Assembly (NCBI GenBank): GCA_964019335.1
Contig: OZ025733.1
Span: 124,001 to 188,000, forward strand
Direction: 5' to 3'
Length of the DNA: 64,000 nt
Origin: Diplonema japonicum
Taxonomy: Eukaryota > Protista > Euglenozoa: Diplonemea
Position numbers and translations under genes: made by a program. The stretch's first letter is position 1. Each line of letters begins with the position of its first letter. This document shows, in pieces, positions 26,351-50,657 of this stretch. The notes under the pieces were generated by a model. It made no database searches, had not been told where the DNA came from, and saw only the letters and a program-made list of their open reading frames with translations.

Positions 26351-28000
26351 ATGACCGATGCAGGAAGGCTACCTGAAGGGAGGCTGCCTGGTGTTCTAAG
26401 AAACAACCAGTCTCAAGGGAAGCGGGATACACCGGACAATGTGGAGATAGAGGCACTACCGTCATCGACCGCGCTTCCAGCGGTTCAACGATTTGCGGTG
26501 GAGAGCCTGCTTGACGATATCGATAAAATGGTAGCGGTGGCTACTGAAAAAGACAAGGTTTTGGTTGAGAAGAAAGAAGAGTTGAAGCCATCCCTCGCAA
26601 AAAAACCCTCTAGAGATCTACGCAAGCAAAGGCTGTCCCTTTCCGACAGGAAGGTCTTGGACAAGATCGACAACATGACAAAAGAAGAAATAGAAAACCT
26701 GGAAGGCAGATATCTGCAGTACAAAAAAGAAGACCGCGAACGGCAAAACAGCCTCCGTGCTATGAACCAAACGGACATCAAAAAAAACGAGGCGAAAATG
26801 ATAGAGATGAAGAAAAAAAAAGTGACCGAACAGGAGCACTGCGAAGAGATACAAAGCAACAAGAAAGCACTTCAAAACGAGAAAGAAAGCACGACAAGGA
26901 AAGAGGTACACGATAGAGAAGAAGACCGTTCTCTAGCAGCGAGAAGGGTCCGCAGACTGTTCACTACAGTGATATGTCATGGACTTGTCGGGCAGTTCTT
27001 CAAATCGGTTGTGAACATGAACGAGAGAGAAAAATGCAAAATCGTATATTTTGAAACAGTGGCACAACCAAGGGTTTGGGACGCTCTCGCCTCTGCAAAG
27101 ATCACAGCAGCCGTGCGACGAAATCTGTTCTTGATTAAATGTGTCCGTCGCTACCGTATGCGAAAGCGGCGCAACGCAACCGCCGTTGTAGCCTACCTGT
27201 TGCGGGCGAGAAAGAAACACTTCTCGATCCGCTTGTTCTACCGTTCCACGGTGAAAATCCAACAATGGTGGAAACGAGTTGAGAAAGAGAAAAAATCCCG
27301 TGTTTGGCTGGTCTCCTTGCAGTGGGACCGCGCTTGGGACTCCTTCTACGAGTCAAGGGTAACCTCTCCGCAAAACAACGGAAATGTCCTGCAAATCCCC
27401 GGTTTCATCAAATACAGAACACTCCGAAATGTTTTGCACCAAAAGAGCAAGGATTACGTTGCAACCATCAGACAGTTGGAAGCGTTGAGGACAACGACGA
27501 AAAGGGAGATTGAGAAGGGTTTGAAAACCCGTGCTGACCTGGACCCCACCACTGCAATGCTTATCGACTCCGAACATGTCCCACGCCTTAAATATCTTCT
27601 AAGACAAGACGAGATCACCCTGGCCATTCAAACCGCTTATAACTCCACCAAAGCCCTCGCCAAGCTGATCAAATCACTTGTGAAACAAGAAACCGCGTGT
27701 CGAGAAAAGATTTTCGACGAACAGGTTCTCCACCTTGCCTACCTCGCGGATCATCATTCCTCTGTACTTCAGGAGGCAAAAGCGGAGGTGTCGCATCTGG
27801 ATGGCGGTGTTCTTCCGCCCAAACCCGGATCGGGTTTCGCCGAGGACACTGCCGTCACCCGTCCGAAGGGTCCTAGTTACGACGCGAAAACAGGAAGACG
27901 GCTCACAGAACCTTTGGAAGATCTTGCTCTACCGTCGGCAGCAGGACGTTCTGCCGGACCACGACGGGGCTCGAGGAGAAAATCCAACACCGAAAAATGA
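26351..28000 (+). CDS. Hypothetical basic coiled-coil protein with an IQ-like motif
   Basis: 549-aa ORF. VKIQQWWKR resembles an IQ calmodulin-binding motif. Confidence 0.8.
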   Translation: MTDAGRLPEGRLPGVLRNNQSQGKRDTPDNVEIEALPSSTALPAVQRFAVESLLDDIDKMVAVATEKDKVLVEKKEELKPSLAKKPSRDLRKQRLSLSDRKVLDKIDNMTKEEIENLEGRYLQYKKEDRERQNSLRAMNQTDIKKNEAKMIEMKKKKVTEQEHCEEIQSNKKALQNEKESTTRKEVHDREEDRSLAARRVRRLFTTVICHGLVGQFFKSVVNMNEREKCKIVYFETVAQPRVWDALASAKITAAVRRNLFLIKCVRRYRMRKRRNATAVVAYLLRARKKHFSIRLFYRSTVKIQQWWKRVEKEKKSRVWLVSLQWDRAWDSFYESRVTSPQNNGNVLQIPGFIKYRTLRNVLHQKSKDYVATIRQLEALRTTTKREIEKGLKTRADLDPTTAMLIDSEHVPRLKYLLRQDEITLAIQTAYNSTKALAKLIKSLVKQETACREKIFDEQVLHLAYLADHHSSVLQEAKAEVSHLDGGVLPPKPGSGFAEDTAVTRPKGPSYDAKTGRRLTEPLEDLALPSAAGRSAGPRRGSRRKSNTEK

Positions 28001-28145: not shown

Positions 28146-29048
28146 ATGCAAAATGCAGTCGGCGTAGCCATAGTTCCAGATGGGTCGTACAACGGGTCGA
28201 CAGCGCAGGAGACGCCAAGGAGCGAGGGGACCACTGCGACAACTGGGACAACGACAACAGCGACGATCCAACGAGGGGGAGGAGGGGTCCTGGGGTGTAC
28301 ATGGAGCGGCTGCACACTGTTGGAGGTTGTCCCAAACTCACTTGCTTACAAACAAGGCATGCTGAAACACGTGGGCAAGACAGTGGTGTCTGTCAACGGT
28401 GTAGGTGTGTGCAGCCAGAAGGAGATGGAAGAGGCAATCTCCAACCAACCATGCCTCACATTTGCGTTTAGGGAAGCCGAAGACTACGTTGATGACGAAC
28501 CAAACCCGGAACCAGTGGTGAAGAGCTCGAAATCCTACAATATCATCCTTCAGCTTCTGCTCTACTCGTTCGGGGTGGTCCTTTGTTCTCTTTGCCTGGT
28601 TCTGCCGTGGCTGACAATATCTTCAATTACTTACAAGTTAAGTGAGATGGATAAACTTAATTCTGTGGATTTTGACAACACCATTCAGTCCTCTGCGGCG
28701 CTCGTCGTATTGTTTATCGTCGATGTGTCGCTTTTTGCGCTGGAGCTGCTCTATAGTGTTTATGTGTTCCTCATTCCTTCTGTGTCTGCGCGAACTATCA
28801 GTGTTTACGTGCAGGGTGCGCTGGTTTTGTCTTGTGCTGCTTCCTTTGTCACTACTGTCGTGTTTCATGCGTCCTTTGAGCGGGAGTGGGCGAACCGGCC
28901 TTTGGAGTCGTTTCCTAATGCGAGTTCGTCAATAAATTCCGGGCTTGTTACGTCTTATTTAATAGGTGGGCTAATATGCGTGTCAACTGCATTGCAATGG
29001 TGCTGTTTGAAAGAGCAGCTGGATCTGACCTCTGTGTCGCCTGTTTGA
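28146..29048 (+). CDS. PDZ-like domain plus four-TM (claudin/amastin-like topology) membrane protein
   Basis: LGCTW..TLLEVVPNSLAYKQG...VVSVNG is a PDZ-like pattern. Four hydrophobic helices follow, the first ending LPW. Confidence 0.75.
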   Translation: MQNAVGVAIVPDGSYNGSTAQETPRSEGTTATTGTTTTATIQRGGGGVLGCTWSGCTLLEVVPNSLAYKQGMLKHVGKTVVSVNGVGVCSQKEMEEAISNQPCLTFAFREAEDYVDDEPNPEPVVKSSKSYNIILQLLLYSFGVVLCSLCLVLPWLTISSITYKLSEMDKLNSVDFDNTIQSSAALVVLFIVDVSLFALELLYSVYVFLIPSVSARTISVYVQGALVLSCAASFVTTVVFHASFEREWANRPLESFPNASSSINSGLVTSYLIGGLICVSTALQWCCLKEQLDLTSVSPV

Positions 29049-29337
29049 AAAGAAAAAAAAAAAAAAAAGAACGAAAAAAAAAAAAAAAACCCTCCCCCCT
29101 CTGGGGGGTTCAAAATCTATTTTTTTTTTTTTTCCCTTGCTATCTTCCCCCCGTCCCTCTAAAAAAAAATTTTTTTTGTGCTTTCTGGTACCTTTTTTTT
29201 TTTTCTTTTTTTTTTCTCTCAGTTAGTTCCATATAGGCCCTGCATTTTTTATGTATCCGCCTGCTATTCTTCTTTTTTTTTCTTTTCCCTTTTTTTTCTG
29301 TCGCTTGCCTGTTTGTGCTGTGTTGTCTCGAAAGAAA

Positions 29338-29386
<49 letters not shown>

Positions 29387-29675
29387 GAGAAAAAGAAAAT
29401 GTAAAAAGAAGAAGAGAAGAAAAAAAAAAAAGAAGAGGGAAAATAAATAAAATAAAAACAGCACCCCCCAAAAAAAAATAACAGATAACAAACCGCAACC
29501 AAGAGTAGTGTCAATTTTTTTTGTTCCAACTTTTTTTTATTTTCTTGCCCCCTCTAAAAGGGTGTTTAAAGTAAAAAAGATCCCCCCCCCCCGCTCTGGG
29601 GCAAAAAAAGAAACCAAATCCAATTGTTACACGAAGGTTCCTTCCAGTAGTTTTTTTTTTTTCTTCTTTTTATTT

Positions 29676-29961
29676 GGTGGTGGGGATAACATGGAAATAT
29701 AAGAAAAACATCAGATGTGTTGTTCGCTGTTGACATCACCGGTAGCGCCCGAGTGGAAGAACATAATGCAGATGCTCAGGGTGACGAACAGGCAGCAAAC
29801 TGCACGAGCGCAGAATCTTGGTTTCCCTGGACGCCACGGCTCACGCATTAAGGACACGACGCGGAACGCAGAAGAAGCTACAACTCGGCCGCGGTGCGCC
29901 CCCTGTAATCAAGTAGACAGTTCTTGTGCAGGGCGCCGCCAACACCGGCCTCCTATAACTC
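29676..29961 (+). mobile_element. Ribozyme-headed retroelement copy 1 (P3/L3 deleted; tail A)
   Basis: Starts ggtggtggggataacatgg, lacks the ctcctcgtcggt segment, otherwise aligns with copies 2-4. Confidence 0.85.
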
Positions 29962-30056
29962 ATATATTTTTATTTAATTCTGAGCGGCTCTCTTAAGGAA
30001 CTTAGGGTAGAAGATATAATTCAGGCTTCACTTCATTTCAAGTCCAGACCTGGGCG

Positions 30057-31036
30057 TGAAATAAAGTATCTGATTTTTTTTTCCCCTCATGTTTTTAAGC
30101 TAAACGTTGCTGGGCGTGAAAATCAGGTACTTTATTTCAAAATGGGGAAAAAACCGAAGGCGACCGGGAAGGCACAAATTATTTGCGAGAGCAGCTCATC
30201 ATTAAATAAAATGTAGTATTGAATAAAATCAGAGCATGATTTCACTTGTGGGGTCCCCTTTTTTGACTCGTTTTTTTACCACAAGTGGAATCAGGCCATC
30301 TGATTTTCATTTAATAAATAGCTATTACTTAATTCCGCAAAGTTACATGAGGAAATTTCTAAAGGGCCATAAGAATCAGAAATCACTTTGCCGTTCACGA
30401 GTAAATGCAAAGTGAAGAATAAATGCAAAGTAATAGGCCGAATTTGGCTTGAAAAAAGTGCAATAAATGCAAAATGTAAAATCTGATTTTTACTCTGAGC
30501 AATTTTCGGGCTTTTTTTTGGTATTCGTCTTCATTTTTTGCATCTGGTGTGCCGCTTTACAAACGTCACTCGACATATAAATAAACTGGTTCGCAAAATA
30601 TGAGACGTAACCCAACCTGCCCAAAACACAGTCAGGCATCCGAGGCAAAAGAGGCATAAACACACTTTACCAGGTTTCCGAGCCACCAAGCATCACACCT
30701 GAGGCCGGCAAATGCCGAAAATTACACTGGCCATGCATACTTGTTGATGAAGGAACCTGATGAAAGAACCGTTTGCACAAACCAGCAGTTTCTGAAGAGC
30801 GATGATCAAGTGCCGACACAAATTACACAAAACCTACAGAATTCTGTCAATTTGACATCATCTTCTCAGGCAATCAGGCTTAGTTTTGACATCAATGTGA
30901 ACATTTCGCAGAAGTGAACATAAAGGGTTCACAGTGTCCGAAATTTCCTCATTTAACTTTGCAAAAATTAAGTAAAATATCATACTAAATAAAAATCAGG
31001 TAATCTGATTTTTATTTAGTAAATAGTCATTATTTT
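30057..31036. mobile_element. AT-rich element with nested inverted repeats (~60-bp imperfect IRs at 30300-30359 / 30940-30999)
   Basis: ctgattttcatttaataaatagctattacttaattccgcaaagttacatgaggaaatttc versus its near reverse complement. Extra hairpin at 30057-30139. No ORF. Confidence 0.6.
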
Positions 31037-31921
31037 TCTCCTCTTTTTTCGCTTAAATCAGACCCCTCGGCAAGGTAGGGATAGTTCGAAAAGAGAATTG
31101 CCGGTCTACATAGACCCGCGATTTTTCTTGTACCTGTGCGGTAGCCCCCTTTTTTTTGTGAAGATTTCCCCCCCCCCCCCCCCCCCCCCTCCGTTTTATT
31201 ATTCATTTAAATCTTACTCTGCCGGTTCGATATTGACCATAAGACCTATGCAGGTGTAGAACTTGGCAAAGAGGCGAAAAACAAAGTGTGGAAGAGGAAC
31301 TAGGTTAAGGACGTGAAAGACCAGTCTTGTAGTGGCTGGGCGTTTCAGGCTCAAGGTACAGCAGCGGTCAATCACAGTTTCAGTAAAAGCTGCGCCTGAG
31401 AAACTGTGCTGTTCTTTTTGAGAGTGAAGATTTCATCGGTTGCGTGATAAAAACGATTTCATGAAATAAAAAAAAAATAAAAAAAAGAGAAAAAAAAAAG
31501 ATTTTCACAGTGCGCTGATCGAGAGGCCCAATTGAAAAAAAAAAAAAAAAAAAAAAGGGTCCAAAAAATCGGCCAAGAATACCGCAGGTCTAACGGGGAA
31601 AAAAAAAACCCGTTTTGAACCGGGGCCCTGCTTAAATGTTTTTTTTTTTTTTTCTTTTTTTTTTGAGGGAACGGAAGGCATAAGGCCTTTTTGTACACTC
31701 GCTTGTCAAGGCGTGCGGCTTTCCCCCCCCTTTTTTTTCTTATTTTTTGTCCAACAGGTGGACAGGAGCCGCGGTGTATTGCCCCGCCATCCCTGCGATG
31801 CGCTGGCGGAAAAGTGAGATTCAAAAAGCTTTAAGGGGGAACGTTGGCAACGTGCTTCGGGCAAACTTCTCCAGGTTTTACCCGGCACGTACAAACAAAA
31901 GTGTTTTTTTTAGGTTTTATA

Positions 31922-32055
31922 GGTGGTGGGGATAACATGGAAATATAAGAAGTACATCAGATGTGTTGTTCGCTGTTGACCTCCTCGTCGGTCATCACCG
32001 GTAGCGCCCGAGTGGAAGAACGTAACGCAGATGCTCAGGGTGACGAACAGGCAGC
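31922..32055 (+). ncRNA. HDV-like self-cleaving ribozyme
   Basis: P1 ggtggtg/catcacc; J1/2 hairpin ggataacat/gtgttgttc; P2 gctgttg/ca(g)gcagc; P3 acc/ggt; L3 tcctcgtc; P1.1 gg; P4 cgcccgagt/gctc(a)gggtg; J4/2 gaCgaa with predicted catalytic C32044. Confidence 0.88.
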
Positions 32056-32246
32056 AAACTGCACGAGCGCAGAATCTTGGTTACCCGGGACGCCACGGCT
32101 AGGGTTGAGCACACCGCACGCATTAAGGACACGACGCGGAACGCAGAAGAAGCTACTGCTCGGCCGAGGAGCGCCCCTGTAATCAAGTAGGTAGTTCGTG
32201 CTTCATTGCACGCTTAACGCCACCTAGTGTTGCAATCAAAGCCCCA
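31922..32246 (+). mobile_element. Ribozyme-headed retroelement copy 2 (intact; tail B)
   Basis: Full ribozyme, second long stem-loop domain, tail B, then a T tract. Confidence 0.88.
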
Positions 32247-32332
32247 TTTTTTTTTTTTCTTTTTTATTGCTACACACTACAGCTTGATGTTGAAATGGTT
32301 CCCTTCTTCTTTTTCTCTTTGAAACATCCGGG

Positions 32333-32364
<32 letters not shown>

Positions 32365-32475
32365 GCCTAGCGAGGTTTTTGCAACTCCGGAATCATTTTT
32401 TTTTTTTTTTTTTCATGAATGCTCACACAAAAATATATGAGGAAGAGGTGGGGGGGAAGAAGAAAAAAAAGGAGG

Positions 32476-32507
<32 letters not shown>

Positions 32508-32811
32508 ATAATGGGACTAATATATATCTTTCTTTCCTTTCCTTTCCCTAGGACTATGATGGCAAGACCCGTAAAAAAGAAATCACGCGCTTTCTTGCCA
32601 TCACATCCTCCCCCGCCCCATTCTTTACTTAATTTGTTTTCTTTTTCTGTTTTTCTGTTACTACCTTTAGTATCATGTGAACCTCTTAATTTCTTTGCCC
32701 CCCCGAAGAGAAAAGGACGTTCCGCAGCCAACAGGGGTGTCAAGGACCAAATATTTTTTTTTGCCCCCCCTTTCTTTTTTTACCTTTATCTCTTTTATAT
32801 ATATTTTTTAA

Positions 32812-33036
32812 GGTGGTGGGGATAACGGTCATCACCGGTAGCACCCGAGTGGAAGAACATAATGCAGATGCTCAGGGTGACGAACAGGCAGCAAACTGCA
32901 CGAGCGCAGAATCTTGGTTTCCCGGGACGCCCCGGCTAGGGTTGAGCACTGGCCGAGGAGTGCCACCTGTAATCAAGTAGGTAGTTCGTGCTTCGTTGCA
33001 CGCTTAACGCCACCTAGTGTTGCAATCAAAGCCCCA
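32812..33036 (+). mobile_element. Ribozyme-headed retroelement copy 3 (internal deletions; tail B)
   Basis: Same 5' start, with deletion of most of J1/2-P2-L3 and of the apex of the second domain. Confidence 0.85.
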
Positions 33037-34143
33037 TTTTTTTTTTTTCTTATTTTTCGAAAAGTAATTAAAGAGGTTTACATTTTTTTTTTTTTTTTTT
33101 TTTTAATATTTCCGGCAAACTCTTTGCTGCGTTCATTGTGCAGTTCTATTGGACTTTGCCGTTCCCACAAGTCTGGAACCTGGCTCGCACAGTTTTTTTT
33201 TTTTTTTTTTTAAGGGGTTGGGTACATTTCCCCCCCCTCCCCCTCCGCTGCGAGGCACTGCGTGCGCGGACTTTGTTAATGAGGCTCTTAGTGAGTGAAG
33301 AAAAATGACAAAAAGTGTGAAAATCGAACAGATTTTGTCTTTCTTTTTTTTCTTCGTTCATGGTTTCATCAGCAACTACCCCCCCCCCCCCCCCCCCCCC
33401 CCCTGTCGTAATGGTGCCCATTTAACTTTTTGTGCGTTTGCAAAAAAAAAAAAAAAAAAAAAAAAACGCTTCCTTACGTTCACGGCCCCAAAAATGAGAA
33501 AGAAAGAGAGAAAAAAGAAATTCGATGAAAAAAAAAAACCCCCCAACTAACGAATATTCTGAGGGAAAAAAAAAAGAAAGAAACAATGCTCATCATATTT
33601 CCTGTGTCACCCCATCCCACGTTTTTTTTTTTCTCCCCCCTTCCTCATCCTATCTTTGTTTTTGTTTCTGGTTCTTGTTTTGTGTTTCTTTTCTTTTTCT
33701 TATCTCTAAAAAGGGGCACCAAAGATGCTTATTTATTTCTTTTGTCCCTGTTTTTTTTCTTCTTTTTTTCTTTTCTTTTTTATAATTATTATTCCCTTTC
33801 TGCCCCTTTTGGCAATGTAGCAGTTTTTTTTTTTTTTTTTTTTTCTTCTTCTTTTTTTTGCTATCTAAATATATAAAAAAGAATGTTCTAAACAACAAAG
33901 GAAAGCAAAGCTTTCTTTAACAAAACAAAAAAAAAATGATTGAAAGAAGAAATATTTCCTCCTGTTTGCCTCCAATTTCCGGGAAAAGAAGTGGGAAAGG
34001 GAACAAGAAAAAAAAAAGAAAAAAAAACCCTCCCCTGATTTTCACGAAAAAAAGTTTTTTTTTTCCAATAAATGACTCGATATGACAGGTGATAAAAAAA
34101 AAGATGATTTCTGCTTCTTTTTTTTTTTTTTTTTTTTTTTTTT

Positions 34144-34258
34144 GGATACGGCCATACTCTGGTGAATGCACCCCATCCCGCCTGATTTGGGAAGTTAAGC
34201 ACCAGCAGGCCAGGTTAGTACTGCGGTGAGTGATCACGTGGGAAGCCCTGCTGTATCC
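34144..34258 (+). rRNA. 5S rRNA copy (probable retro-pseudogene or SINE3-type head)
   Basis: ggatacggccatac...gaagttaagc...ggttagtact...gggaa...gctgtatcc with a 9-bp terminal helix. 115 nt with an apparent ~3-nt loss in the 3' strand of helix V and no oligo-T terminator. Confidence 0.93.
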
Positions 34259-34267
34259 TCCAAACCA

Positions 34268-34396
34268 GGTGGTGGGGATAACATGGAAATATAAAGAAGT
34301 ACATCAGATGTGTTGTTCGCTGTTGACCTCCTCGTCGGTCATCACCGGTAGCGCCCGAGTGGAAGAAGCAGATGCTCTGGGTGGCGAACAGGCAGC
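34268..34396 (+). ncRNA. HDV-like self-cleaving ribozyme
   Basis: Same P1/P2/P3/L3/P1.1 as copy 2, shorter P4 loop, J4/2 ggCgaa (C34385) as in the HDV genomic ribozyme. Confidence 0.88.
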
Positions 34397-34581
34397 AAAC
34401 TACACGGGCTCAGAATCTTGGTTACCCGGGGCGCCCCGGCTGGGGTTGAGCTGCACACCGCACGCATTAAGGACACGACGCGGAACGCAGAAGAAGCTAC
34501 AGCTAGGCCGAGGTGCGCCCCCTGTAATCAAGTAAATGGTGCTTGTGCAGGGTGCCCCCACCGGCTTCCTTTAAATCACCG

Positions 34582-34583
<2 letters not shown>
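34268..34583 (+). mobile_element. Ribozyme-headed retroelement copy 4 (intact ribozyme; tail A variant), fused behind 5S
   Basis: Aligns with copies 1-3 and is followed by a long T tract. Confidence 0.88.
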
Positions 34584-34615
<32 letters not shown>

Positions 34616-34653
34616 GAAAAAAGGACCATATGAGGGCATTTTTTACGAATAAA

Positions 34654-34690
34654 AAAATAAAATAAAATAAAATAAAATAAAATAAAATAA
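34654..34690. repeat. (AAAAT)n microsatellite
   Basis: About 7 units visible. Confidence 0.85.
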
Positions 34691-34781
34691 AAAAAAAAAA
34701 GAGGTTTGCAGCAAGTATTGTGGGCCGTAAAATTCTTCCCCATCATAGCCACCACCACCACCACCACTACCCCCCTCCACA

Positions 34782-34812
<31 letters not shown>

Positions 34813-34869
34813 TTCCCATCTTTACCTGGGGAGGGGGAAAAAAAAAGAGAGGGGGAAGGGGGGGGAGAA

Positions 34870-37254
34870 ATGCAACAAAACACTTTAAACCACAAATTTA
34901 TAAAATACGATGACAACTACAAAGATCCCCAGCTGAAAGGTCTACGGGAAAAGCTGGAGGGTTCCATGAAAGAGATTAAGGCGGGAACCGACATGAAAAT
35001 AGGCGGAAAACGAGGCAGCACCAACGGGAGGGCGAAAATCGCCAGCGTACTGGGCCTCCGCCAGAGCCCCTTCTCAGAACGGATCGTCGACTTCTTTTTC
35101 TCTGGTGAAACTTTTTCCGAAGAACTATTTATGGATTGGGTAGAAATTCTACTGGGGAAAGGGAACTACCACCACAAGGCAAGGTTTATATTCTATATAT
35201 ACGACGTTCGCTCTTCCAAATCTTTGACCGAGTCTGATATTGAAGCTCTTCTCCTCCAAATTGTCACGGAAAACAAATTCAAGTTCAAACCTGCCTCGCT
35301 GGAGATCCTCACACAAGCTCTTTTTACCCAATTCGGGGAATTTTTGTCGGACGGGACAATGACGGAACAGGAGTTCATCGAATTTTCAGAAGGGTATCCG
35401 GAAATCCTCGACAATTTGACCATCGGGAACCTTTCGAACAACAACTGGAAGGCGGGGCTTTCTTACACATCGAGCAAGGACACGATCGCAGCGTTTCTCG
35501 GGAAGAATATCAGTTTGGACAGGCGGCAGATGCCGTGGAGCCGGAGATTGTATTATAAATGGCAGCTTGAGGGAAGCAAGTACATAATTCTCTTCCTGTG
35601 GATTGTCGTGATGGCGGTGATGTTCGGTTCTGAGTTCTCAAAGTACAATACCCAACTAAACTACGATCTGAGCGGGTACGCGATTCCAGTTGCAAAATCC
35701 GCGGGGGCAACTATCCGCCTCAACAGCCACCTGTTGCTGCTGCCTGTCTGCAAGCAGCTTTCGACCGCGATACGCGGGTTCTTTTACAACGCTAGTTTTC
35801 TGCGGTATTTCACAAAAAAAACCGATTTTTCACGCCACCACGGCCCGACGTGGCTGTGGGACAAACACATCTCCTTCCACAAACGCCTGGCCACAGCGAT
35901 GATCATCGCAGTTCCCGTTCACGTTATCGCGCATTTGATCAACGTTATTAAGATGGCAAATGCATCCGACGAGCTCATCATGAACCCGCACTACAATTGG
36001 TGCTGCGGTGAAGGGTCGTATTTCGACCGGTTTCCTTACTTAACGGAAAGTCCCGGAGTGGCACGGTTGCTGTTTCTGTCAGTACCAGGATGGACAGGAT
36101 GGCTTCTGCTGGTCATCTTAACATGCATCACCTACACCGCCCTCGCAAAAAACCGCTCGAAAAACTTCGAAAGATTCTTCTACACACATTACACTATGGT
36201 GTATTTCTACGCCTTGCTACTTGCCCATGGTTCGACACAACTGGTAGCCTTCCCGAGATTTTGGATATGGTCGCTGGTGTTTTTAACGTTGTTCTTGTTG
36301 AACACCATATTGCGGTTGAGGTCTATGAAGAAAGTCGCAATCGTATCCGCGAAGGTGGACTATCAAACACAATGGCTCGCGCTGACGTTGCAAAAACCGG
36401 AGAACTGGTCCGGAAGGACCGGGTCCTACGCGTTGCTGAACGTTCCGGAGATTTCGAGGACGCAGTTTCACCCGTTTACGCTGTCGAGCACCCCTGATTC
36501 CGAACACCTCGGGTTCCACATAAAATGTGCAGGAGATTGGACAAAAAACCTTCAAAACTTACTAAAACGCGGGGAGGACGGAAGAGGCTACCCCGAGGTA
36601 GTTGTCGAAGGCCCATATGCTTCAGCAGCGGAACACGTCTTCGAATATGACGTTTGTTTACTTTTCTGCGCTGGTATAGGTGTCACACCCTATGCATCCA
36701 TATTAGAACATATCAAAACCCGGCAGCAACGGAGGAAGAGTGAAGCGTTTCCACCACAACATAAACAGGGCACACCCGATAAACCAGCTCCGAATATATA
36801 TTTTTACTGGACGTGCCGGGATCAGTTTTCATTTTCGTGGTTCGGCGGATTGTTTGGAGAAATGCTCAAGGTCAAGCCCCAAGACGCAATTCAACCCTTC
36901 ACAAACCTCTCGCACCCCGCATTCCCCACTGACCGTTTCGTCCCCAACCTTTTCATGACAGGAGCCCTTCCCCAAGGCGATGTTTCAAACACAATTCTCC
37001 AAATGGCTCTCGATTCTGTATATCAAAAGACTAACATTGACCTTGTTACTGGCATAGCCGATTCTGGGCAAACCCGGTTCGGCCGTCCTAACATCGAAGC
37101 CGTCTTTGAGGAGATGATCGACACCTACCCGGGGAAGGAGATCGGTGTTTTCTTCTGCGGCCCGCAGGCTATGGGATCTTCCATCCACACGTATGCCCTG
37201 AATAAATCGGGAAAGCGGGGCACGATCTTTAGATATTTCAAAGAGGTGTTTTAA
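34870..37254 (+). CDS. NADPH oxidase with N-terminal EF-hand region (NOX5/RBOH-like)
   Basis: EF-hand-like FIFYIYDVRSSKSLTESD. Heme-ligating His pairs (FHK...HVIAH; FYTH...AHG), FAD motif HPFT, EGPY, AGIGVTPY, GVFFCGP, terminal FKEVF. Confidence 0.93.
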   Translation: MQQNTLNHKFIKYDDNYKDPQLKGLREKLEGSMKEIKAGTDMKIGGKRGSTNGRAKIASVLGLRQSPFSERIVDFFFSGETFSEELFMDWVEILLGKGNYHHKARFIFYIYDVRSSKSLTESDIEALLLQIVTENKFKFKPASLEILTQALFTQFGEFLSDGTMTEQEFIEFSEGYPEILDNLTIGNLSNNNWKAGLSYTSSKDTIAAFLGKNISLDRRQMPWSRRLYYKWQLEGSKYIILFLWIVVMAVMFGSEFSKYNTQLNYDLSGYAIPVAKSAGATIRLNSHLLLLPVCKQLSTAIRGFFYNASFLRYFTKKTDFSRHHGPTWLWDKHISFHKRLATAMIIAVPVHVIAHLINVIKMANASDELIMNPHYNWCCGEGSYFDRFPYLTESPGVARLLFLSVPGWTGWLLLVILTCITYTALAKNRSKNFERFFYTHYTMVYFYALLLAHGSTQLVAFPRFWIWSLVFLTLFLLNTILRLRSMKKVAIVSAKVDYQTQWLALTLQKPENWSGRTGSYALLNVPEISRTQFHPFTLSSTPDSEHLGFHIKCAGDWTKNLQNLLKRGEDGRGYPEVVVEGPYASAAEHVFEYDVCLLFCAGIGVTPYASILEHIKTRQQRRKSEAFPPQHKQGTPDKPAPNIYFYWTCRDQFSFSWFGGLFGEMLKVKPQDAIQPFTNLSHPAFPTDRFVPNLFMTGALPQGDVSNTILQMALDSVYQKTNIDLVTGIADSGQTRFGRPNIEAVFEEMIDTYPGKEIGVFFCGPQAMGSSIHTYALNKSGKRGTIFRYFKEVF

Positions 37255-38933: not shown

Positions 38934-39345
38934 ATCTTACTTTTGGCCAACTTTCGCGATCAAATAACAGCGCCAAAAATCAAACAATGAGCCCCCGCCA
39001 ATAAGACAATAGGGGCTTCCGGAGTGAGGAAATTTCTGAAAAAAGCAAAAAAAAGGTTTGTTTTGTTCAAGCCGGTTTGAACAAGGTCTCACAAAAACCT
39101 CTCTTTCACTCATGCATTTCTTCTTTTTTTTTTCTCCCCCTTTTTTTTATTCCCCTCTTCTTCTCACTAAATCTTTTTTTTTTTTTTTTTTCCTCTTCTC
39201 TATTTAATTCAAAAAAAAAACAATTGCTTACGGTACTTCCACACACAAAAAAAAGAAAAAAAAAGGAGAGGGGTGGAATTTCAAAAGAGGAAAAAAAAAA
39301 AAAAAAAAGAAGAAAAAAAGACGACCGACTCAACCATTGAATGGA

Positions 39346-42300
39346 ATGAACAAACAACAAAGCACAACCAAATCCACGCTTTTCTTGGCTGTGGCAACAT
39401 GCTTGTTTGCAGTATCCAGAGGCCAGGTAGTAGACCGTGAGGACCAGGAGATAGCAGGGGTCCTCATTGGTGGTGATGGATGGTCCCCAGGCTTCGTAGG
39501 ACGAGGAGTGGAAGGCGTTGCCAACCTAACCGGAAACCCGAGAACAATTTTCAAAAGCAGGACAAATCTGGTACGAACGGACTCGCACAGAGCACCCCCC
39601 ACAAATGCCTGGTGGGAGGACCTCCTGACAACTAACGCCACAACGGAAGTCGTGTCTGTAATGCCATTACAACTCAAAGCATGGTACCTCCAATGCCGTA
39701 TAGAACTGTCAGAAGGATCCACCGCTGTGAACGTTTCCTCACCCAACACCACATCAACATCCTTCACAGCCTCTGTTTCTGTTGTTATAGGATCGGCTTC
39801 GTGTTTCCCACAAGTTTCTGATTCGGACAGATTCGGAGTCAACGTTACTCTTAATGTAAACCCTGCCAACCCTGCCCCGGTCGGGAATTTACTGCTTGCC
39901 CGCGGGCATCCTTATGCAACGATAGATGTTTCCGATCAGGATATTTTCTTGTTTTCACACAAGGGGTGGGCGTCGTTATCGAGACTGAACATACCCACAG
40001 GCGGTTCTGTGAACTTTGTGGGGGACTTCGCGGATCTAGTTGATGTTGATGGTGACAGATGGTTGGTCAGCCTTCCTGCTGTTACAAATATCACCGCGTT
40101 GTCCTCCGGTACCGTAATCTTCCACGACAGGATCAACGGGTTCGTTCGTGTGAGTAAGGTTCCCGTCGCGGTGCAGCACCACACCGGCGGGTCCGGAAAC
40201 CTCCCCCACGAAACCTTCGAGACGCTGCGTCAAAACGCTGGCTGCACCGTCATTGGAGGCCTTATATCCCACAACCACACTTACAACCCCGACCGTTCTA
40301 TCACATCGGTAACCGGGGTTCGATACACATACACTTGGAGGGTCATCCCGGCAGGATGCACACCGTTGATGACAACGCTTCCTCATCATAGAGGTGGGGT
40401 TCTTTCCGGGACAACGGAGACTACATTGAAGTACCAATCGGTGTTGGGGGATCTGGACGGTGTTCTTGGAAGCGATTGGAGGTTCACGATACCGTTGAAG
40501 ATGTCGATCGACTCGCCGCGGGTAGAGAACTACACACAGTGCGGGTTGGTCGAGCTGTTTAACGCTCTCCTGTCGGACATCAAGACACATGGGAACGGGA
40601 CTTTGCTGGCGGATGACGAGTACGGTCTGCAGCTGTACCATATGGGAATGATGAGCACCACGGCGAAAACCCTGCGAGCGGACACACAGCTCAACACTGT
40701 CTTGGGCTACGCTAACGGGTGGATCGACCAGCTCAACGATGGTGTCCTTGTCTACGACACTTACTGGGGTGTCGTGTGTACCGATAGAAACACTGGCTCC
40801 GCACACGCAACTTGTTTTGGAGAGTCACATTTAATTGCATACGGTGAGATGCTGCACGCCTTGACCAAGCTGTGGCCCATTCTCCTCGACGACACCGCAT
40901 CGCAGCAAGACCGCATCCGAACTGAGTCGAAGCTCGCGAGAATGGCCAGAGCGCTAATCCGCAACCTGGCAAACCTGTCCGAAAAAGATGAATACTTCCC
41001 TGTCTCAAGGGGATTCGATTGGTACACAGGGCTTGCTTGGGATAGATATGGCGTGCGACCCAACTCCCCAGGACGTACCGCATCACCATTGGGAACCACT
41101 TTATTGGCGTACGACGCGGTTGGGCTGCTCGGACAGAAGTATCTAAACGACCCTGAAATCGTAATCTCGGGTGAGCTTTTGCTGTCCCAAGAATCCTGGG
41201 CCGCCACATTTTATCTCATGAAAGACGACAGCGATGGGCTTGGAGTGGTGGTCGAAGTACTGGACCATGACAAGTCGGTTAGAGGCGACGATTTGTTAGT
41301 GCTCGCTCCGTTCGACAAGTCCGTTACGCCTCATATAAAACCAGTGATACCTTTTTTGAACGAGACGCAGCTTGCTCTTCAAGGCTCCACGGGTACTCCC
41401 TTCGATATCATGCTGCTTTCATTGCTGAACCCCACCCGCGCGCTTCAAATCCACCTCGAAATCGGCGATAATTTAGGTTACACAAACGCCTCTTTAGACA
41501 CGCGTGTCGGCGACGTCGTTACCTTGATGGAGAGAAACGGCGGGTCCGGGTGTTCTGACGCGGGGTTCGAGCTTCCGATCAGGGTTTTAGGCACCACGAT
41601 ATGGTACAAAAACTCATTCAATTACCTGTTCAAAGTCATGGACTACCAACCGACCGTGATCGGGAAGGCGGTGACGAGCTACAACATCTACGAGATGGCG
41701 CGGTTCGGTGACATATTAAGGAGAGATGTCACGCATATAAAGTCGCTGGGCTTCAACACGGTGATGATCTCCACGGCTACGTTTTCGGTCGACGCTTTCC
41801 TCACGATGTGCAAGGAGCTGGACATGAACGTCATCGTTGCCCAGATCCTCCCAGCTGCCGGGTTCGCAACAGAGAAGTTCATCGCTGAGGCAGATTTCAA
41901 GCAGATGCTGACGTACCTTGCGGCACATACAAACATTGTCATGTGGTCCATCGATTCCGCAGCCCTGACTACCATCCAAGACGCCATTGACTACTACGTT
42001 CTTCTCCGTAAGCTCCGTCTTCTCCGCGACGAGCACGACCCGACAAAACGCCCGATCATGGTCCCCTTGACGGAGTTCACGCTTCCCAAACTGACTGTCA
42101 ACAAAGGACTTTACGATCTGGCCGTTGAAGTCGCGATTTTAACAACGCTTGAAGCCGACTACGCGCGTATCAAAACCAACATGCAATTCCTAGACCATCC
42201 GGTCATCGTGAACTTCAAGTCCGACTCATGGAACCACGTCAACGAGACGAACGACGAGGAGTACCAGTCGAAGTTTTTGAAATCGCAAATTGAGATCACG

Positions 42301-45300
42301 CTTCCCCTCCACTCCGAACAGCTCCTGTCCGGCATCGCTGTCACTGAATACGTCGACCAATATTGGAGGGGGTCGCAATCCGACCCCGATTTCGACTGTC
42401 CCGATCCGTCAAGCTTCAGGCATTCTGTGTGCGGAGTGCGTGTTGCGGAGTTCCATGACGGGATGCTGACCTCTGAGTACATGGGCATCAACGCACAGTC
42501 TCAAACATGGTTCAAGCATTGTATCCGACACAAGGCAGCCTACTATATGCTGCGGGACTTGCTTGGCGGGACAGCGCTACCGACGGACCATCACGAGGTT
42601 TGCGAGTACGTTGATCAAACCAACAGCTACTGGAAGCTCATCATCTGGGTGACAGTAGCTTGCGGTGTAGCGTGTCTGTGCCTCATCATCGCCAGTCTCT
42701 TCCAAGAGGACACAATAATTGACGACACAGCCATCGTCGCCAAAGACCGTTGGGCCCAAGCAGATACCGATGAAATTTACGGGTTGATAACCCACGGCAC
42801 CACCACACTTCTCGACCAACCCCCGTTCAGCGGGATGAACATCCAGAACATTGACGAAGACCTCGACGACGAAGAGGAAGTGGAGGTCGATTCATGGGAA
42901 TTCTGCAGATGGCAAGTCATTATAATCCAGCTGGACCATCTTCAAAAGGTCATCTTCGACGAGATGGTTTGCCAGCTGAAGATCGGAAGCTTAGAGGACG
43001 TCGGTGAAAACCCGCAAGGGTTTAAAACCGCTGTGGACACACTGCACAAGAGATACCTCAACTCATACCTAGGTTGGTTCGATTCACAAAAAACCAAGAC
43101 TGGCGCTGCTTTAGGAGAGTGCCACCATGTAAGATGGGAAATCGAGTTCGGGTCTGAAGAAGAGCCGATCTACATGCCCCTTAGGGAGGACGTATCGACT
43201 GAAATCGAATCAGCTTGGAAGGAAAATGTCAACGCACTGGAACTCGTGCACGACGGCCGGGACTACGACATGGTGATTGACACCGAACTGTGCCCGGAGC
43301 GTGACATCGCTCTTATTTACGATAAATACCAGGACGGAGCCCCTGTTGGTACCGCGTATAGGCGTGCGAGAACAGGGACAGGTAACACCACCAACGACCA
43401 GCTCATCGATCTGTTGATTTTGCTGTCTCTGTGGCACCTCGGGGAACAACTGACCTGGTTCAACGGACACTGGCTGAACTGGCAGTTCCATTATGTTATG
43501 AAACACATGAAATTCCCCGCCACGACCATTCTCAATGATTGCAGGCATTTTGAAAACCGCACCGTTACCATGGACGATATTAACGAGTCGTGTGCGATTA
43601 AGCCCTACTTCGACATTGAGGGAACTCGTGGTGTTGACGAGGAGGGCCATGTTCTGCTGAAGGACGGGGTGTACAATGAAGATGAGATTAAGCGGTACCC
43701 GTTTCAAAAAACGTTCAGGGAGCCGAGGAAGTGGGGCATCGTGTTCTCGATCATCCACAACATCTACTTCATCGTCCACACGCAGGTTATGTCCTTCGTG
43801 TTCTGGTCGTTGGTGGTCAACATCTCAGCGAGGGACCAACGGTTGGCCGACAAAGGAATCTCGGGAATGTTTGACAGAATGGAGCTTGTCTTCTTCCATT
43901 CCCCAGACCACCTCAGATGGATCCTCACCACATGCGCAAAGCTTGATTTTTGGTTAGTTGTTGTCGGTGAAATAATGGACGTGTGGATGCTCGGAGGTTT
44001 CTTCCACTACACCTCTCAAGACTGGGCACCGACATTCTTACGTGTGAAATTCCTCGACTACATAAAGCTGAGATGGTCTGCGTACACATCTGTCACCGCG
44101 TTCATCATCTTAATGGGGAGCACGTTTTGGGATGACACCTTCACCGCAACCTTCGCAACCATCGGTTCATACGTTTTGGTAAGAGTCTTCGGGATTATCA
44201 TAAGCAACGCTGTTTTGGTCTTGTGGCCTGTTCGACTGCGAGGCGCCCCTCGTAGAGGTAAGGCTTTAAACAGGAAAGAGGTCATCCAAGAATTCAGCGG
44301 ATCGGTTCTGTTCTGGGTACTGTGCTACTCCTCCGTCCAGCTCTTCCAAGCGTGGATTATGTTCCGTACAGAAACAGTCAGCTGGGAGTTTTGCGACTGC
44401 GACGACTCGTACTCAGATATCATCGAAACAGGAATCGCACAGTTCGGGCACGATTTCTTCGGAAGAATGTTTACATGTGCTGATAAGGAGCCCCGTTGTT
44501 TCACCGCGGTGTTTCTGATCTGGCTCACCGCCATTGCCCTGTTCATCGTTGCTGTCAATGCAGGGTTCTTGGTGTGGACTGTTCTGTTCGGGTCGTTCTC
44601 CCATTTCCACAGCCAGTGGAAATCCAGAAAAGCGAGGTCTTTGGTTGGAAAGAAGATCCAGACAGCGTACATCCTCAGATCCTTGAACGTTAAGATGCTT
44701 GGTTTCACAGACCCGAGGGACACGCAGGTTGCTAGAAAAGTGTGGAATCGCGTAATCAAAGAGCTTTGGGACGAGTATCTGATCTCCGCATTTGAGTACG
44801 AAAACCTGCTGATCCACACCCACGTCCACGAGGTGCAGTTTGCGTTGGAAAATGATTTCGCGATGGAGAGGCTCTCGAATTTTTTGGAGTACATCCAGTC
44901 AACGGACGAGGATGGGTTGGGACCGTGCTCAACCTACCCGAGCATTTCGATCGTTATACCTGTTTATGGGGAGGATCTGGTCTGCGCTGGTGCCAACACA
45001 ACGGGCGCTTTCAACGAAAAACTGCGCAGCCACCAGCAGGAGAAAACACAGCTTAACTTCTTGATCGACTCGTACAACGACGAGTGGGTGAACTTCGTGG
45101 AGCACTGCGTGCTAGACGAAGAGTTCTTCCACGATGTTCTGACCGAAGAACAGGTCGATCAGATGCAAACAGATGTCGAGGAGCTCAAGGCCGTTACAGA
45201 CGGGAAGACAAAGCGAGACATGAAAGGCGACAGGGAACTCCGTACCTCCGCGGCAAATATCATTGCAGACAAGATACACACCCAACCGCATTTGTTTTAT

Positions 45301-48300: not shown

Positions 48301-50657
48301 ATGCTCGTCCCGGAGGAGGAACAAGAGATAGTGTATGACTACGACTGGCTCATTGAACACGAGAAGAACCAAGCGGAAATCGAGAAATTCCTGAAAGTGT
48401 TCAGGTCGCTGAATGGCGAGGTCACAGGCCCGAACACCCACGGTGGGAAAGTCCCTCACAAGGTCGTTCAGTGGAAGTCCATGCAAGACGGCTTCATCAA
48501 GCTCGGCAAGGTCGTCGACGACGCAACGTGCAAGGAATTATTGTTAGGCCTCGGTGTGGAAGCTGTCGACTTTGTTCAGTTCATCGTTTGCTTCCACAAA
48601 GCCGAAGGTGTCGAGGCAGGCCACGGTGACTACGGCATCGACCGTGCCGTGACCGACATCAACCGAGCCCGCCACCGCGAGCTCAGGCATATTCAGGAAC
48701 AGATGGCACTCGGCAAAAAGGGGTACCTCAGAGCCAAGGACGAGTCTGAAAAGATCGCCGCCTTAACAGTCCTTCACAACACAAGAAGGGAGTTCAAGGT
48801 GAAGTTTCAAGACTCCACTGAAGACAAGGTCCTCGTCAAGACAAACTCTCTGAAGCACCACTGGAAGATCTCGATCATCTTGAACTACAGAGGGTGTTCC
48901 ACCCTCGGCGCGTTCCTCTTCTCTCTCACGCTGTTCTCTCTGTGGTGCTTCGCGTACTTTGCCTTGTGGCAGGTGTGTCGTCGAAAAAGAAAAACGTGGC
49001 AAAAAAAAATAAAAAATACAGGATATCACTTGGGAAGTCTTCATCTTCGTTTGCATTCTCACGTGGGACTACCTTCTCACCATGTCCAACATTGGGCCCA
49101 TCGTGCTCGTCACCCGTGTCACCTCTGCCGTTGTTATCATCTGGAGGTCCATCACCATGCTGACGGTATGTAAACGAACCGGGAGAAAAAAAAAGAAAAA
49201 AAAAAAAAAAAAAAAGGTCGACAATAAATTCTACCCGACCTTTGTAATGACCTACGCTTTGATGCATATGGTTCTGGAAGTGCAATTCTCATTTTGGTCG
49301 TGCGCCGGGCCTTATATATTAAGGAGACAGTATGGAAAAACAAAAAAAAAAAAAAAAAAAAAAAATGAGGGGGAAAAAAAAAACCCACAGAGTAACGCCC
49401 GGAAAAGAAAACCCGAAAACCCTCGACGCGCAACGCGAGATGTGTCTCATCTCCCTGTTGAAGGACAACAGAGAGAGGTACCTGTGGGGTTTCCCATACT
49501 ACTTCCTGGGCAGGCAGCTCATGGCGATCGCGATCGGGCTGATGCAATTCATCTTTGGGATCATCATGCTGATCATTAGAACTCTAATCGAGTTCATCAA
49601 ATACCTCATAGACATAATGGACGGGTACTGGAGGAGGAAGAACCCCACGGAAGCTACGTATATTGCAGACAAGAAACACTTCATATCGGACGATGACTGC
49701 AAAGGTCCGCCTGTCAACGCATGGACGAACACTGTGAAACCGAAGGTCGCGCATAAACTGTGTCAAGTAACAGACCCGAACGTTCGAACAGAGTACAATA
49801 AAATAACGGTCATAGAACCACCCGGGAAGAGCACGGTTGTATTCGATGACTTACCACCGCCTCCCACGCTGGTACCTCCGTCGGCTCCGTCGGCTCCGAG
49901 TCCTATGAAGAATCATAATCAACAAACACAATCTTCGCCGAATAATTTCTTATCAGTCTCGATCGGCGAACCGCCGTTGTCCGCTCGTTCCGACGAACTT
50001 TTCGGACGACGCGGATCCCGTGCTGGGCTTGGGATATCTCGCACCAATACAAAAACGAATTTACTTCACAGAAGCGATAGTTTTGTTGGTGCTGGAAATC
50101 TTACAGGCTGGCACAACCCCGCCCATGGTCCACCTCCTGAAGCGTTGGAGACAAACCTTCAAAATTTCGGGTCGGGGTTATACCGTCCTGCTAGTAGTTA
50201 CGGTGCGGTACCGAAGACACCGCAGGTTCAGATTCAAGTTCCGGGTTCAGATGGTGACAGTGAACTGTCTGCGGTGGGTCTGACCATGCCTGATTATGGT
50301 CCGGAGGAGCCGGTTGATGAGCTTGGGGAGATTCAGTCTAATTTGGTGTACTTTGGTGATGGTGACCAGACGAATTATGTTCCCACAGAAGCGTTTGCTA
50401 ATGTGTTGGAGTTCCGAATGGGGATTAAGGCGTTTTATCGGTTCCTCGGACCGGTGCAGCAGGTTAGGTTGGAGATTCTTGGGAAGGAAATCGTCGATAG
50501 CGATCCTTGGCCTTTCTTGACGTCGAAGAACTGTTTTGTGCAGGTTTTGCTGTCGAACATGTACGCGCCGAGGGAGCGGAAAACTGCGATTTTTGCAAGG
50601 CACGAACTGCGTGGCAAGACCGCACTCGAGTCACGGTTGTTGGAGAATCAGATTTAA
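39346..50657 (+). CDS. Giant beta-1,3-glucan synthase (GT48) with N-terminal GH81-like and clan GH-A-like domains; exons 39346-48972, 49022-49165, 49217-49329, 49391-50657 (~3716 aa)
   Basis: Signal peptide; PPTNAWW and FPVSRGFDWYTG (GH81-like); YQPT...RRDV..IKSLGFNTV (TIM-barrel GH); GT48 motifs GKAVNQ..SLMFTRG..IQAIDANQDGY.DEALK, HYGHPDFFD, NLNEDIFAG, GKGRE, YIATGR. Three GT-AG introns join the track's ORFs in frame. Confidence 0.92.

What the first reader, a model, noticed from the sequence alone, without database searches (positions are those of the whole stretch)
34144..34583. 5S rRNA fused 9 nt upstream of the ribozyme: SINE3-like chimera or Pol III launch pad
Seen: a near-complete 5S copy starts immediately after a long T tract, lacks its oligo-T terminator and is joined via tccaaacca to ribozyme G1. 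The first long T run comes only after the element. Inference, two models: (a) the RT jumped from the element RNA to a 5S RNA and inserted the chimera; (b) the 5S internal Pol III promoter drives a read-through RNA that the ribozyme splits, releasing element RNA with a U-rich 3' end. Model (b) would explain both the headless copies and their T tails. I do not know of a described 5S promoter + ribozyme + tail arrangement.
Basis: partly seen in the sequence, partly recalled or inferred. Interest (0 to 1): 0.85.

Follow-up and report, generated by a model that had tools for sequence, protein, structure and literature searches.

The report
5S rRNA–SINE chimeric retrocopy
A copy of 5S ribosomal RNA was stitched onto the front of a short jumping element while that element was being reverse-transcribed, and the hybrid was pasted into a run of T; this is a known kind of accident, not a promoter designed to launch the element.

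Summary
A genuine 5S copy (Rfam, 86.9 bits; 34144-34259) follows a T26 run and lacks a terminator. Nine bases later comes base 1 of a 316-bp SINE with over 1,000 copies, whose head fits an HDV-like ribozyme descriptor. No T4 run occurs before the T25 run after the SINE.

The linker is explained. TCCAAAC is the 5S gene's own 3' trailer. CA is the extra dinucleotide that 27 of 53 ordinary SINE copies carry before base 1.

The genome, very probably Diplonema japonicum, has exactly five 5S-SINE junctions. All five differ, and they involve both trailer variants and several SINE subfamilies. At least ten more 5S copies are fused through the same trailer plus 0-6 T to other retroelement pieces, one a full-length LINE. 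One U6 copy is fused to the same SINE base 1. The 3-nt helix-V deletion and this SINE's tail variant are private to this locus.

Model (a), a reverse-transcriptase template switch, is therefore supported as a recurrent process. Model (b), a Pol III master gene, is not supported, although read-through at this copy remains untested. Earlier follow-ups in this scan reported 5S chimeras elsewhere in this genome. This is a new member of a known kind.

The parts
34118..34143 (+). T26 run directly upstream of 5S base 1. It is the target T-tract, the upstream half of a probable homopolymer target-site duplication.
   Evidence: Ordinary SINE copies also sit behind T-runs.
34144..34258 (+). Retro-copied 5S rRNA, full length from base 1 to the end of helix I. 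It carries a private 3-nt deletion near 34249/34250.
   Evidence: Rfam RF00001, 86.9 bits. Otherwise identical to the canonical gene. No other 5S copy shows the deletion.
34259..34265 (+). TCCAAAC, the 5S primary-transcript 3' trailer. The terminator U's are absent.
   Evidence: The canonical genes read 5S+TCTAAAC+T13 (L033/L036). Fifteen chimeras keep TCYAAA(C) plus 0-6 T.
34266..34267 (+). CA, the extra junction dinucleotide typical of this SINE's 5' ends.
   Evidence: 27 of 53 young standalone copies have CA at -2/-1, and 38 of 53 have A at -1. Here it lies between two RNA-derived parts, so it is not target DNA.
34268..34583 (+). Full-length 316-bp SINE copy, 99% identical to many copies. 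It has a private tail variant, ATCACCGAG.
   Evidence: The private variant gives 1 hit, against 88 for the consensus tail.
34268..34411 (+). Predicted HDV-like ribozyme head. P1 is 34268-34274/34340-34346. P3 is 34326-34328/34337-34339. L3 reads UCCUCGUC. P1.1 uses G34347-G34348. P4 lies within 34352-34383. J4/2 reads GCGAAC, with the candidate catalytic C at 34385. The P2 core is 34319-34324/34391-34396.
   Evidence: 7 of 20,000 shuffles fit the descriptor. No Rfam hit. Cleavage was not tested.
34584..34608 (+). T25 run after the SINE: the element's T tail and/or the downstream copy of the target T-tract.

Best explanation
This is a one-off chimeric retrocopy. A LINE reverse transcriptase that primes in T/A tracts copied a SINE RNA up to its 5' end at G1, the end predicted to be set by HDV-like self-cleavage. 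It added the usual extra nucleotides (CA on the plus strand). It then switched template onto the 3' end of a 5S rRNA primary transcript whose U tail had been trimmed back to the trailer ...UCCAAAC. It copied the 5S to its first base, and the cDNA was joined to the T-tract target. Shown here: the parts, their exact boundaries, the uniqueness of this junction, and the recurrence of such events with 5S and U6. Inferred: the order of the steps, and that the junction was made by the RT rather than by an RNA ligase.
For: (1) The 5S part is a transcript copy. It begins at 5S base 1 directly after a T-run and ends in the gene's own trailer. Canonical genes L033/L036 read 5S+TCTAAAC+T13. (2) There are exactly five 5S-SINE junctions in 62.5 Mb, and all differ: CCAAAC+CA, CTAAAC+A, CCAAA+A, CTAAA+A and CCAAAC+TTTTT. 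They use both trailer variants and several SINE tail subfamilies, so they are independent events. (3) At least ten more 5S copies are fused through the same trailer plus 0-6 T to other retroelement pieces. These are short tails that recur elsewhere, LINE 3' parts, and a full-length APE-RT-RNase H LINE. Several of these 5S parts are 5'-truncated, as expected of aborted reverse transcription. (4) No solo 5S retrocopy was found among the 22 5S loci. (5) One U6 copy is fused, via U6+T6+A9, to G1 of the same SINE, again inside a T-tract. (6) The CA of the linker is the family's usual 5' extra. (7) Short duplications appear to flank whole chimeras elsewhere, by eye only: TTTTCA around the C91 copy, and T-run+G around L037.
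Against: The flanking duplication at this locus is a pure T homopolymer, so a single insertion event cannot be proven here. No RNA or biochemical data bear on it. Ligation of 5S RNA to the 5'-OH SINE RNA before reverse transcription would give a similar product. The strong CA bias of the extra nucleotides is itself unexplained.
Confidence: 0.72

Rival explanations
1. RNA ligation came first. An RtcB-type ligase joined a 5S RNA 3' end to the 5'-OH that ribozyme cleavage leaves on the SINE RNA. The chimeric RNA was then retrotransposed as one template.
For: Human U6/L1 chimeras form this way, and the reaction needs a 5'-OH acceptor (PMC6789731). An HDV-type cut would provide exactly such an end. 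The precise junctions in the C73 copy (U5 directly before G1) and in L046 (U4 directly before the LINE 5' end) are compatible with it.
Against: RtcB needs a 2',3'-cyclic phosphate or a 3'-phosphate, and Pol III transcripts and A-tailed RNAs end in 3'-OH (PMC6789731 makes this point for 5S). Four of five 5S-SINE junctions and the U6 junction carry extra A, CA or A9, as ordinary copies do at their DNA junction. That points to the RT.
Confidence: 0.12
2. Two separate events occurred. A 5S gene or solo 5S retrocopy was already present, and the T-tract-seeking SINE later landed in its terminator T-run.
For: Such landings do happen. A real U6 gene with a conserved upstream region (L082) has a truncated element tail inside its terminator, with T11 left between them.
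Against: Here no T at all is left between the trailer and the SINE. Across 15 junctions the T count is 0-6, against T13 in the canonical gene. The upstream flank is a T-run, not the gene-type flank. No solo 5S retrocopy exists among the 22 loci.
Confidence: 0.08
3. One reading: this 5S-SINE unit is a Pol III-driven master. The 5S internal promoter drives a read-through RNA, the ribozyme cuts it, and the released U-tailed SINE RNA seeds the family.
For: The 5S is identical to the canonical gene except for 3 nt near its 3' end, so the internal control region is probably intact. No T4 lies between 5S base 1 and the T25 run. The SINE head fits a ribozyme fold. TCC-trailer transcripts must come from a gene that is not evident in the assembly; the retrocopy L032 is one candidate source, which would mean 5S retrocopies can be active.
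Against: The exact junction is unique. The helix-V deletion and the tail variant ATCACCGAG occur nowhere else, while 88 copies carry the exact consensus tail. The C73 5S-SINE copy has a T5 terminator before the SINE. The copies in this window lie in sense among plus-strand genes, so Pol II read-through plus self-cleavage suffices. The arrangement itself requires event (a) first.
Confidence: 0.05

Closest known systems
U6/L1 and 5S rRNA/L1 chimeric retrogenes of mammals (bioRxiv 10.1101/2025.02.02.635956; PMC6789731; PMC4476161, found in a search but not read here)
   Same: A small Pol III RNA lies 5' of a LINE-mobilised RNA within one insertion. The events are recurrent and independent, each with its own junction, and occur at the LINE's usual target. 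The bioRxiv paper reports that 10.5% of 253 such chimeras involve 5S.
   Different: Here the partner is a complete non-autonomous SINE, and the join is at its exact 5' end, a predicted ribozyme cut site, not at a random L1 break. The 5S is sense, full-length and keeps its 3' trailer, whereas human 5S/L1 chimeras are often antisense and truncated. The machinery uses T-tracts rather than poly(A). The host is a diplonemid.
Chimeric retrogenes of Magnaporthe grisea made by LINE template jumps (PMC2104539)
   Same: Non-mammalian chimeras of cellular non-coding RNA copies fused directly to each other, attributed to LINE RT template jumps, including double jumps (abstract listed).
   Different: Different LINE clade and different partner RNAs. 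No ribozyme-defined 5' end is involved.
SINE3 and other 5S-derived SINEs (Kapitonov and Jurka 2003, cited from my own knowledge and from the reference list seen)
   Same: A 5S head carrying an internal Pol III promoter is joined to a LINE-recognised tail. Such a family presumably begins with a chimera like this one.
   Different: SINE3 is an amplified family that shares one junction. Here every junction is unique, and no copy has progeny carrying its private variants.
HDV-like ribozymes at the 5' ends of L1Tc/NARTc and R2 (PMC3185411, PMC4035085, PMC3774820)
   Same: A self-cleaving fold at the first bases of a LINE and its short partner, releasing the element RNA from co-transcripts. The trypanosomatid hosts are the sister group of diplonemids.
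   Different: Unrelated sequence and no Rfam match. The J1/2 and P2 are much longer. Cleavage is untested here. The T-run tail and T-tract targets differ.

Membership tests
5S rRNA (Rfam RF00001) | Covariance-model score above the gathering threshold over the full model | tested here: met
   86.9 bits against a threshold of 38, model positions 1-120.
LINE-mediated chimeric retrogene (template-switch type) | The 5' part is a copy of a whole cellular transcript, from its start to its RNA 3' end, in sense with the 3' part | tested here: met
   The 5S runs from base 1 to the trailer TCCAAAC that precedes the terminator in the canonical genes.
LINE-mediated chimeric retrogene (template-switch type) | The 3' part is a LINE-mobilised RNA ending in the family's normal tail at a normal target | tested here: met
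   A full SINE with its tail and a T-run, lying within a T-tract.
LINE-mediated chimeric retrogene (template-switch type) | A target-site duplication flanks the whole chimera | tested here: inconclusive
   At this locus the flanks are T26 and T25, which are uninformative. Duplications containing non-T bases appear to flank other chimeras, such as C91 (TTTTCA) and L037 (T-run+G), judged by eye only.
LINE-mediated chimeric retrogene (template-switch type) | Recurrent independent events with different junctions and different partner RNAs | tested here: met
   Five different 5S-SINE junctions, at least ten other 5S-retroelement fusions, and one U6-SINE fusion.
SINE3-like 5S-derived SINE family | Many copies share the same 5S-body junction (amplification of the chimera) | tested here: not met
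   Each junction occurs once. The private variants have no progeny.
SINE3-like 5S-derived SINE family | A 5S-derived head that retains the internal Pol III control region | tested here: met
   Identical to the canonical 5S except for a 3-nt deletion near position 107. The position of the control region is taken from general knowledge of 5S genes, not mapped in this organism.
HDV-like self-cleaving ribozyme | Nested double-pseudoknot (P1, P1.1, P2, P3, P4) starting at the cleavage site, with a C in J4/2 | tested here: met
   Descriptor search: the real sequence fits, and 7 of 20,000 shuffles fit. The duplex energies are given. Copies are too similar for a covariation test.
HDV-like self-cleaving ribozyme | Match to a curated HDV-type covariance model | tested here: not met
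   No ribozyme family at E<=10 in 33500-35500.
HDV-like self-cleaving ribozyme | Self-cleavage 5' of G1 | not testable with these tools
   This needs in vitro transcription and cleavage, or mapping of 5'-OH ends. The runs available are contigs only.
Pol III read-through source gene (model b) | A transcript that starts at 5S base 1 and runs through the SINE | not testable with these tools
   Only Logan contigs of unknown kind were available. Among the pieces listed, none bridged the junction.
Pol III read-through source gene (model b) | Progeny copies that carry the source's diagnostic variants | tested here: not met
   CTTCCTTTAAATCACCGAG gives 1 hit, which is this copy itself. The consensus version gives 88 hits.

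The most novel reading that the evidence does not exclude
Retro-copied 5S (and U6) genes stay transcriptionally active because their promoters are internal. Two things would follow. First, in this diplonemid the 5S gene family would be spreading by hitch-hiking on a template-switching LINE; about 16 of 22 5S loci are such chimeras. Second, terminator-less chimeras like this one would produce Pol III read-through RNAs that the ribozyme trims into U-tailed SINE RNA. That would be a nascent 5S-promoted SINE caught at birth.
Probability: 0.1. Interest if true: 0.7.

Novelty: new member of a known kind. Interest (0 to 1): 0.38.

Why it matters
The locus itself is an ordinary by-product of retrotransposition, but the set it belongs to is informative in four ways. 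First, six small-RNA junctions lie at or within nine extra nucleotides of base 1 of the SINE: five with 5S and one with U6. A seventh lies at what looks like the exact start of a full-length LINE. These show, independently of target flanks, that the RNA template really ends at that base, as expected if the predicted ribozyme or a fixed start defines it. Second, the junctions record the 3' ends of 5S and U6 RNAs at the moment of capture (trailer, 0-6 U, A-runs). Third, they show that this T-tract LINE machinery switches templates readily. This is the raw process from which 5S-headed SINE families such as SINE3 are thought to arise. Fourth, most 5S-like loci in this assembly are retro-chimeras, which matters for annotating 5S genes in diplonemids.

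Tried and rejected
**RNA evidence.** The look-up of sequencing runs and read laying on 2,001 letters gave only Logan contigs of unknown kind, broken at the T-runs and inside the repeat. Among the pieces listed, none bridged the junction, and no starts or ends were usable. I did not use the summed depths, as the tool advises.

**Rfam ribozyme models.** There was no hit, so I checked the fold with my own descriptor instead.

**Covariation.** The SINE copies are too alike for a covariation test, and I did not pursue it.

**CCA tagging as the origin of CA.** I rejected this because the other junctions carry A or A-runs and ordinary copies carry CA next to DNA.

**CA as target DNA.** I rejected this for the present locus because CA lies between two RNA-derived parts. 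In the C91 chimera, however, a CA upstream of the 5S may belong to a TTTTCA duplication.

**Other chimeras.** I looked for SINE heads with no T in the six bases upstream. Nineteen such heads were found, several behind A-runs or CCAAAA. A shorter 5S anchor added no further 5S junction.

**A Pol III A/B box inside the SINE.** I looked by eye and found only a weak A-box-like string at the wrong distance, so I dropped it.

Full report
**Observation**

Rfam's 5S model matches window 34144-34259 on the plus strand at 86.9 bits over its whole length. It is the only family in the window above its gathering score. The 5S begins directly after a T26 run at 34118-34143. Against the canonical 5S gene of the same genome, it differs only by a 3-nt deletion near 34249/34250 and by one base in the trailer.

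After the last base of helix I come TCCAAAC (34259-34265) and CA (34266-34267). Then follows a 316-bp repeat (34268-34583) that starts GGTGGTGGGG and ends ATCACCGAG, and after it a T25 run. No run of four or more T occurs anywhere in 34144-34583.

**The repeat and its head**

A search of the window's own 62.5-Mb, 132-contig assembly gave 1,411 first-look candidates. The 40 that were scored yielded 45 matches, most of them 96-99% identical. Three further copies lie in the window at 29676, 31921 and 32826, all on the plus strand.

Rfam finds no ribozyme family at E<=10. By hand and by duplex folding, however, the head has every element of an HDV-like fold:
- P1 pairs 1-7 with 73-79, and P3 pairs 59-61 with 70-72.
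- L3 reads UCCUCGUC, and a two-base P1.1 pairs to G80-G81.
- P4 lies within 85-116, and J4/2 reads GCGAAC.
- A long P2 pairs 39-57 with 124-143.

A strict descriptor anchored at base 1 is met by the real sequence and by only 7 of 20,000 shuffles. The copies are too similar for a covariation test. Cleavage is untested, so 'ribozyme' remains a good prediction.

**Where the nine-base linker comes from**

Two 5S loci with shared flanks on both sides (C59:511924 and C15:778588) look like real genes. They read 5S, TCTAAAC, then T13. TC(T/C)AAAC is therefore the 3' trailer of the 5S primary transcript, and the T-run is the Pol III terminator.

The remaining CA is the usual extra at this SINE's 5' junction. 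Of 53 young copies, 27 have CA at -2/-1, and five of those read CCA. Thirty-eight have A at -1. The linker is thus trailer plus usual extra, not a designed spacer.

**Genome-wide census of 5S**

BLAST and the Rfam model find about 22 dispersed 5S-like loci and no array. A pattern search finds exactly five 5S-SINE junctions, all different (a shorter anchor added none):
- C86 (this one): CCAAAC+CA
- C24: CTAAAC+A
- C23: CCAAA+A
- C91: CTAAA+A
- C73: CCAAAC+TTTTT

These five use both trailer variants and at least three SINE tail subfamilies, and two of the SINE parts carry internal deletions. They are independent events, not copies of one master.

At least ten more 5S copies are joined through the same trailer plus 0-6 T to other retroelement sequence. 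Two carry a 41-nt tail and two a tail of about 45 nt, and both tails recur elsewhere in the genome. Others carry LINE 3' parts of several hundred bases, one ending just before a tRNA gene. One carries a full-length LINE with a 1,330-aa APE-RT-RNase H reading frame.

Several of these 5S parts are 5'-truncated, starting at positions 15, 23, 50 and 51. No solo 5S retrocopy was found. The helix-V deletion is private to this locus.

**U6 does the same**

Of six U6 loci, one (C51:301952) reads T15, A7, U6, T6, A9, and then G1 of the same SINE, complete with its tail and a T23 run.

Another U6 locus has the conserved gene-type upstream region and a truncated element tail inside its terminator, with T11 left in between. 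This shows what a true landing in a terminator looks like. It differs from the 5S junctions, which keep 0-6 T against T13 in the canonical gene.

**Mechanism**

The simplest reading is a template switch during target-primed reverse transcription. The RT copies the SINE RNA to its 5' end at G1 and adds one or two nucleotides. It jumps to the 3' end of a nearby 5S or U6 RNA and copies that fully or in part. The cDNA is then joined to the T-tract.

The 5S ends record RNA 3' ends: the trailer with 0-6 U, sometimes trimmed by a base, sometimes with A-runs. In this copy the U's were gone.

RNA ligation before reverse transcription, as shown for human U6/L1 (PMC6789731), is a real rival, because a ribozyme cut leaves the 5'-OH that RtcB needs. 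However, the extra A, CA and A9 at the junctions, and the 3'-OH expected on Pol III transcripts, speak for the RT.

**Model (b)**

Its structural preconditions hold at this copy: a near-intact 5S and no terminator until the SINE's end. As an explanation of the family, though, it fails on several counts:
- The junction is unique.
- This SINE's tail variant occurs once, against 88 exact consensus tails.
- One of the five chimeras has a T5 terminator before the SINE.
- This copy and the three other SINE copies in the window point the same way as the flanking plus-strand open reading frames of 26351-28000, 34720-37254 and 39337-49173. Read-through by Pol II plus self-cleavage therefore suffices.

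RNA evidence could not be obtained. The only runs holding the stretch are Logan contigs of unknown kind, and among the pieces listed none bridged the junction.

**Identity of the genome and prior work**

Earlier follow-ups of this scan name Diplonema japonicum. The published assembly, 62.30 Mb with 118 pseudomolecules (PMC13598402), matches the size found here, but I did not test identity directly. In a search of that paper's text, retrotransposon, SINE and ribozyme do not occur. A search for diplonemid plus retrotransposon plus ribozyme found one paper, on another subject.

Earlier follow-ups had already found 5S-LINE and 5S-SINE chimeras on other pieces of this genome. This report adds the census, the trailer explanation, the U6 case and the test of the master-gene idea.

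**Comparison and verdict**

This is a chimeric retrogene of the U6/L1 and 5S/L1 type, in a new host and with a ribozyme-headed, T-tract-using element family. It is the kind of accident from which SINE3-like families could start, but nothing shows that this one has amplified. It is a new member of a known kind, of moderate interest.

Noticed in passing
G000:C20:587942-588061 (locus L070; L077 243-362): A divergent but full-length 5S-like sequence (Rfam, 60.8 bits; about 72% identical to the canonical 5S) ends 36 nt before the start codon of a ribosomal protein uL18/RPL5 gene on the same strand (Pfam PF17144, 1.9e-49). RPL5 is the 5S-binding protein. This could be a 5S mimic for feedback control, like the plant P5SM element, or a variant 5S gene.
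   Followed up: partly
G000:C51:301952-302055 (L083): A U6 snRNA copy fused to the same SINE: T15, A7, U6, T6, A9, SINE G1 through its tail, then T23. This is a U6-SINE chimera analogous to human U6/L1.
   Followed up: partly
G000:C109:30209-30312 (L082): A real U6 gene, with a conserved upstream region shared with two other U6 genes, has a 5'-truncated retroelement tail inserted in its terminator T-run. Pol III terminators are therefore also targets of the T-tract-seeking elements.
   Followed up: no
53 young SINE copies genome-wide; window 34266-34267: Half of the copies carry CA, and 72% carry A, between the upstream T-run and G1. A-runs of 5-9 occur at several chimera junctions. The source of these extra bases is unexplained: RT terminal addition or tailed acceptor RNAs.
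   Followed up: partly
G000:C17:472899-473020 (L032) and the 5S set as a whole: No gene-like 5S locus with the TCCAAAC trailer is in the assembly, yet six chimeras carry it. The only intact candidate source is itself a retro-chimera: a 5S identical to the canonical one, then TCCAAAC, then TTTT. Either 5S genes are missing from the assembly or a retrocopy is active.
   Followed up: no
G000:C72:440882-441002 (L045): A variant 5S (97 bits) with a compensatory change in helix I (GGATGC...GCATCC instead of GGATAC...GTATCC) and no TCYAAAC trailer. It is probably a second functional 5S gene type.
   Followed up: no
19 SINE heads listed, e.g. G000:C1:824776, C69:297328, C109:102936, C3:897149: These SINE copies have no T in the six bases before G1. 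Three read CCAAAA, not preceded by the 5S end, and several sit behind A-runs. They are candidates for chimeras with other RNAs or with poly(A) tails. Their flanks could not be fetched.
   Followed up: no
window 29000-34700: A 5.7-kb gap between plus-strand open reading frames holds four copies of the SINE, all on the plus strand (29676, 31921, 32826, 34268). One has lost its P3/L3 region, and one is deleted between the first ~19 bases of the head and the P1 3' strand.
   Followed up: partly
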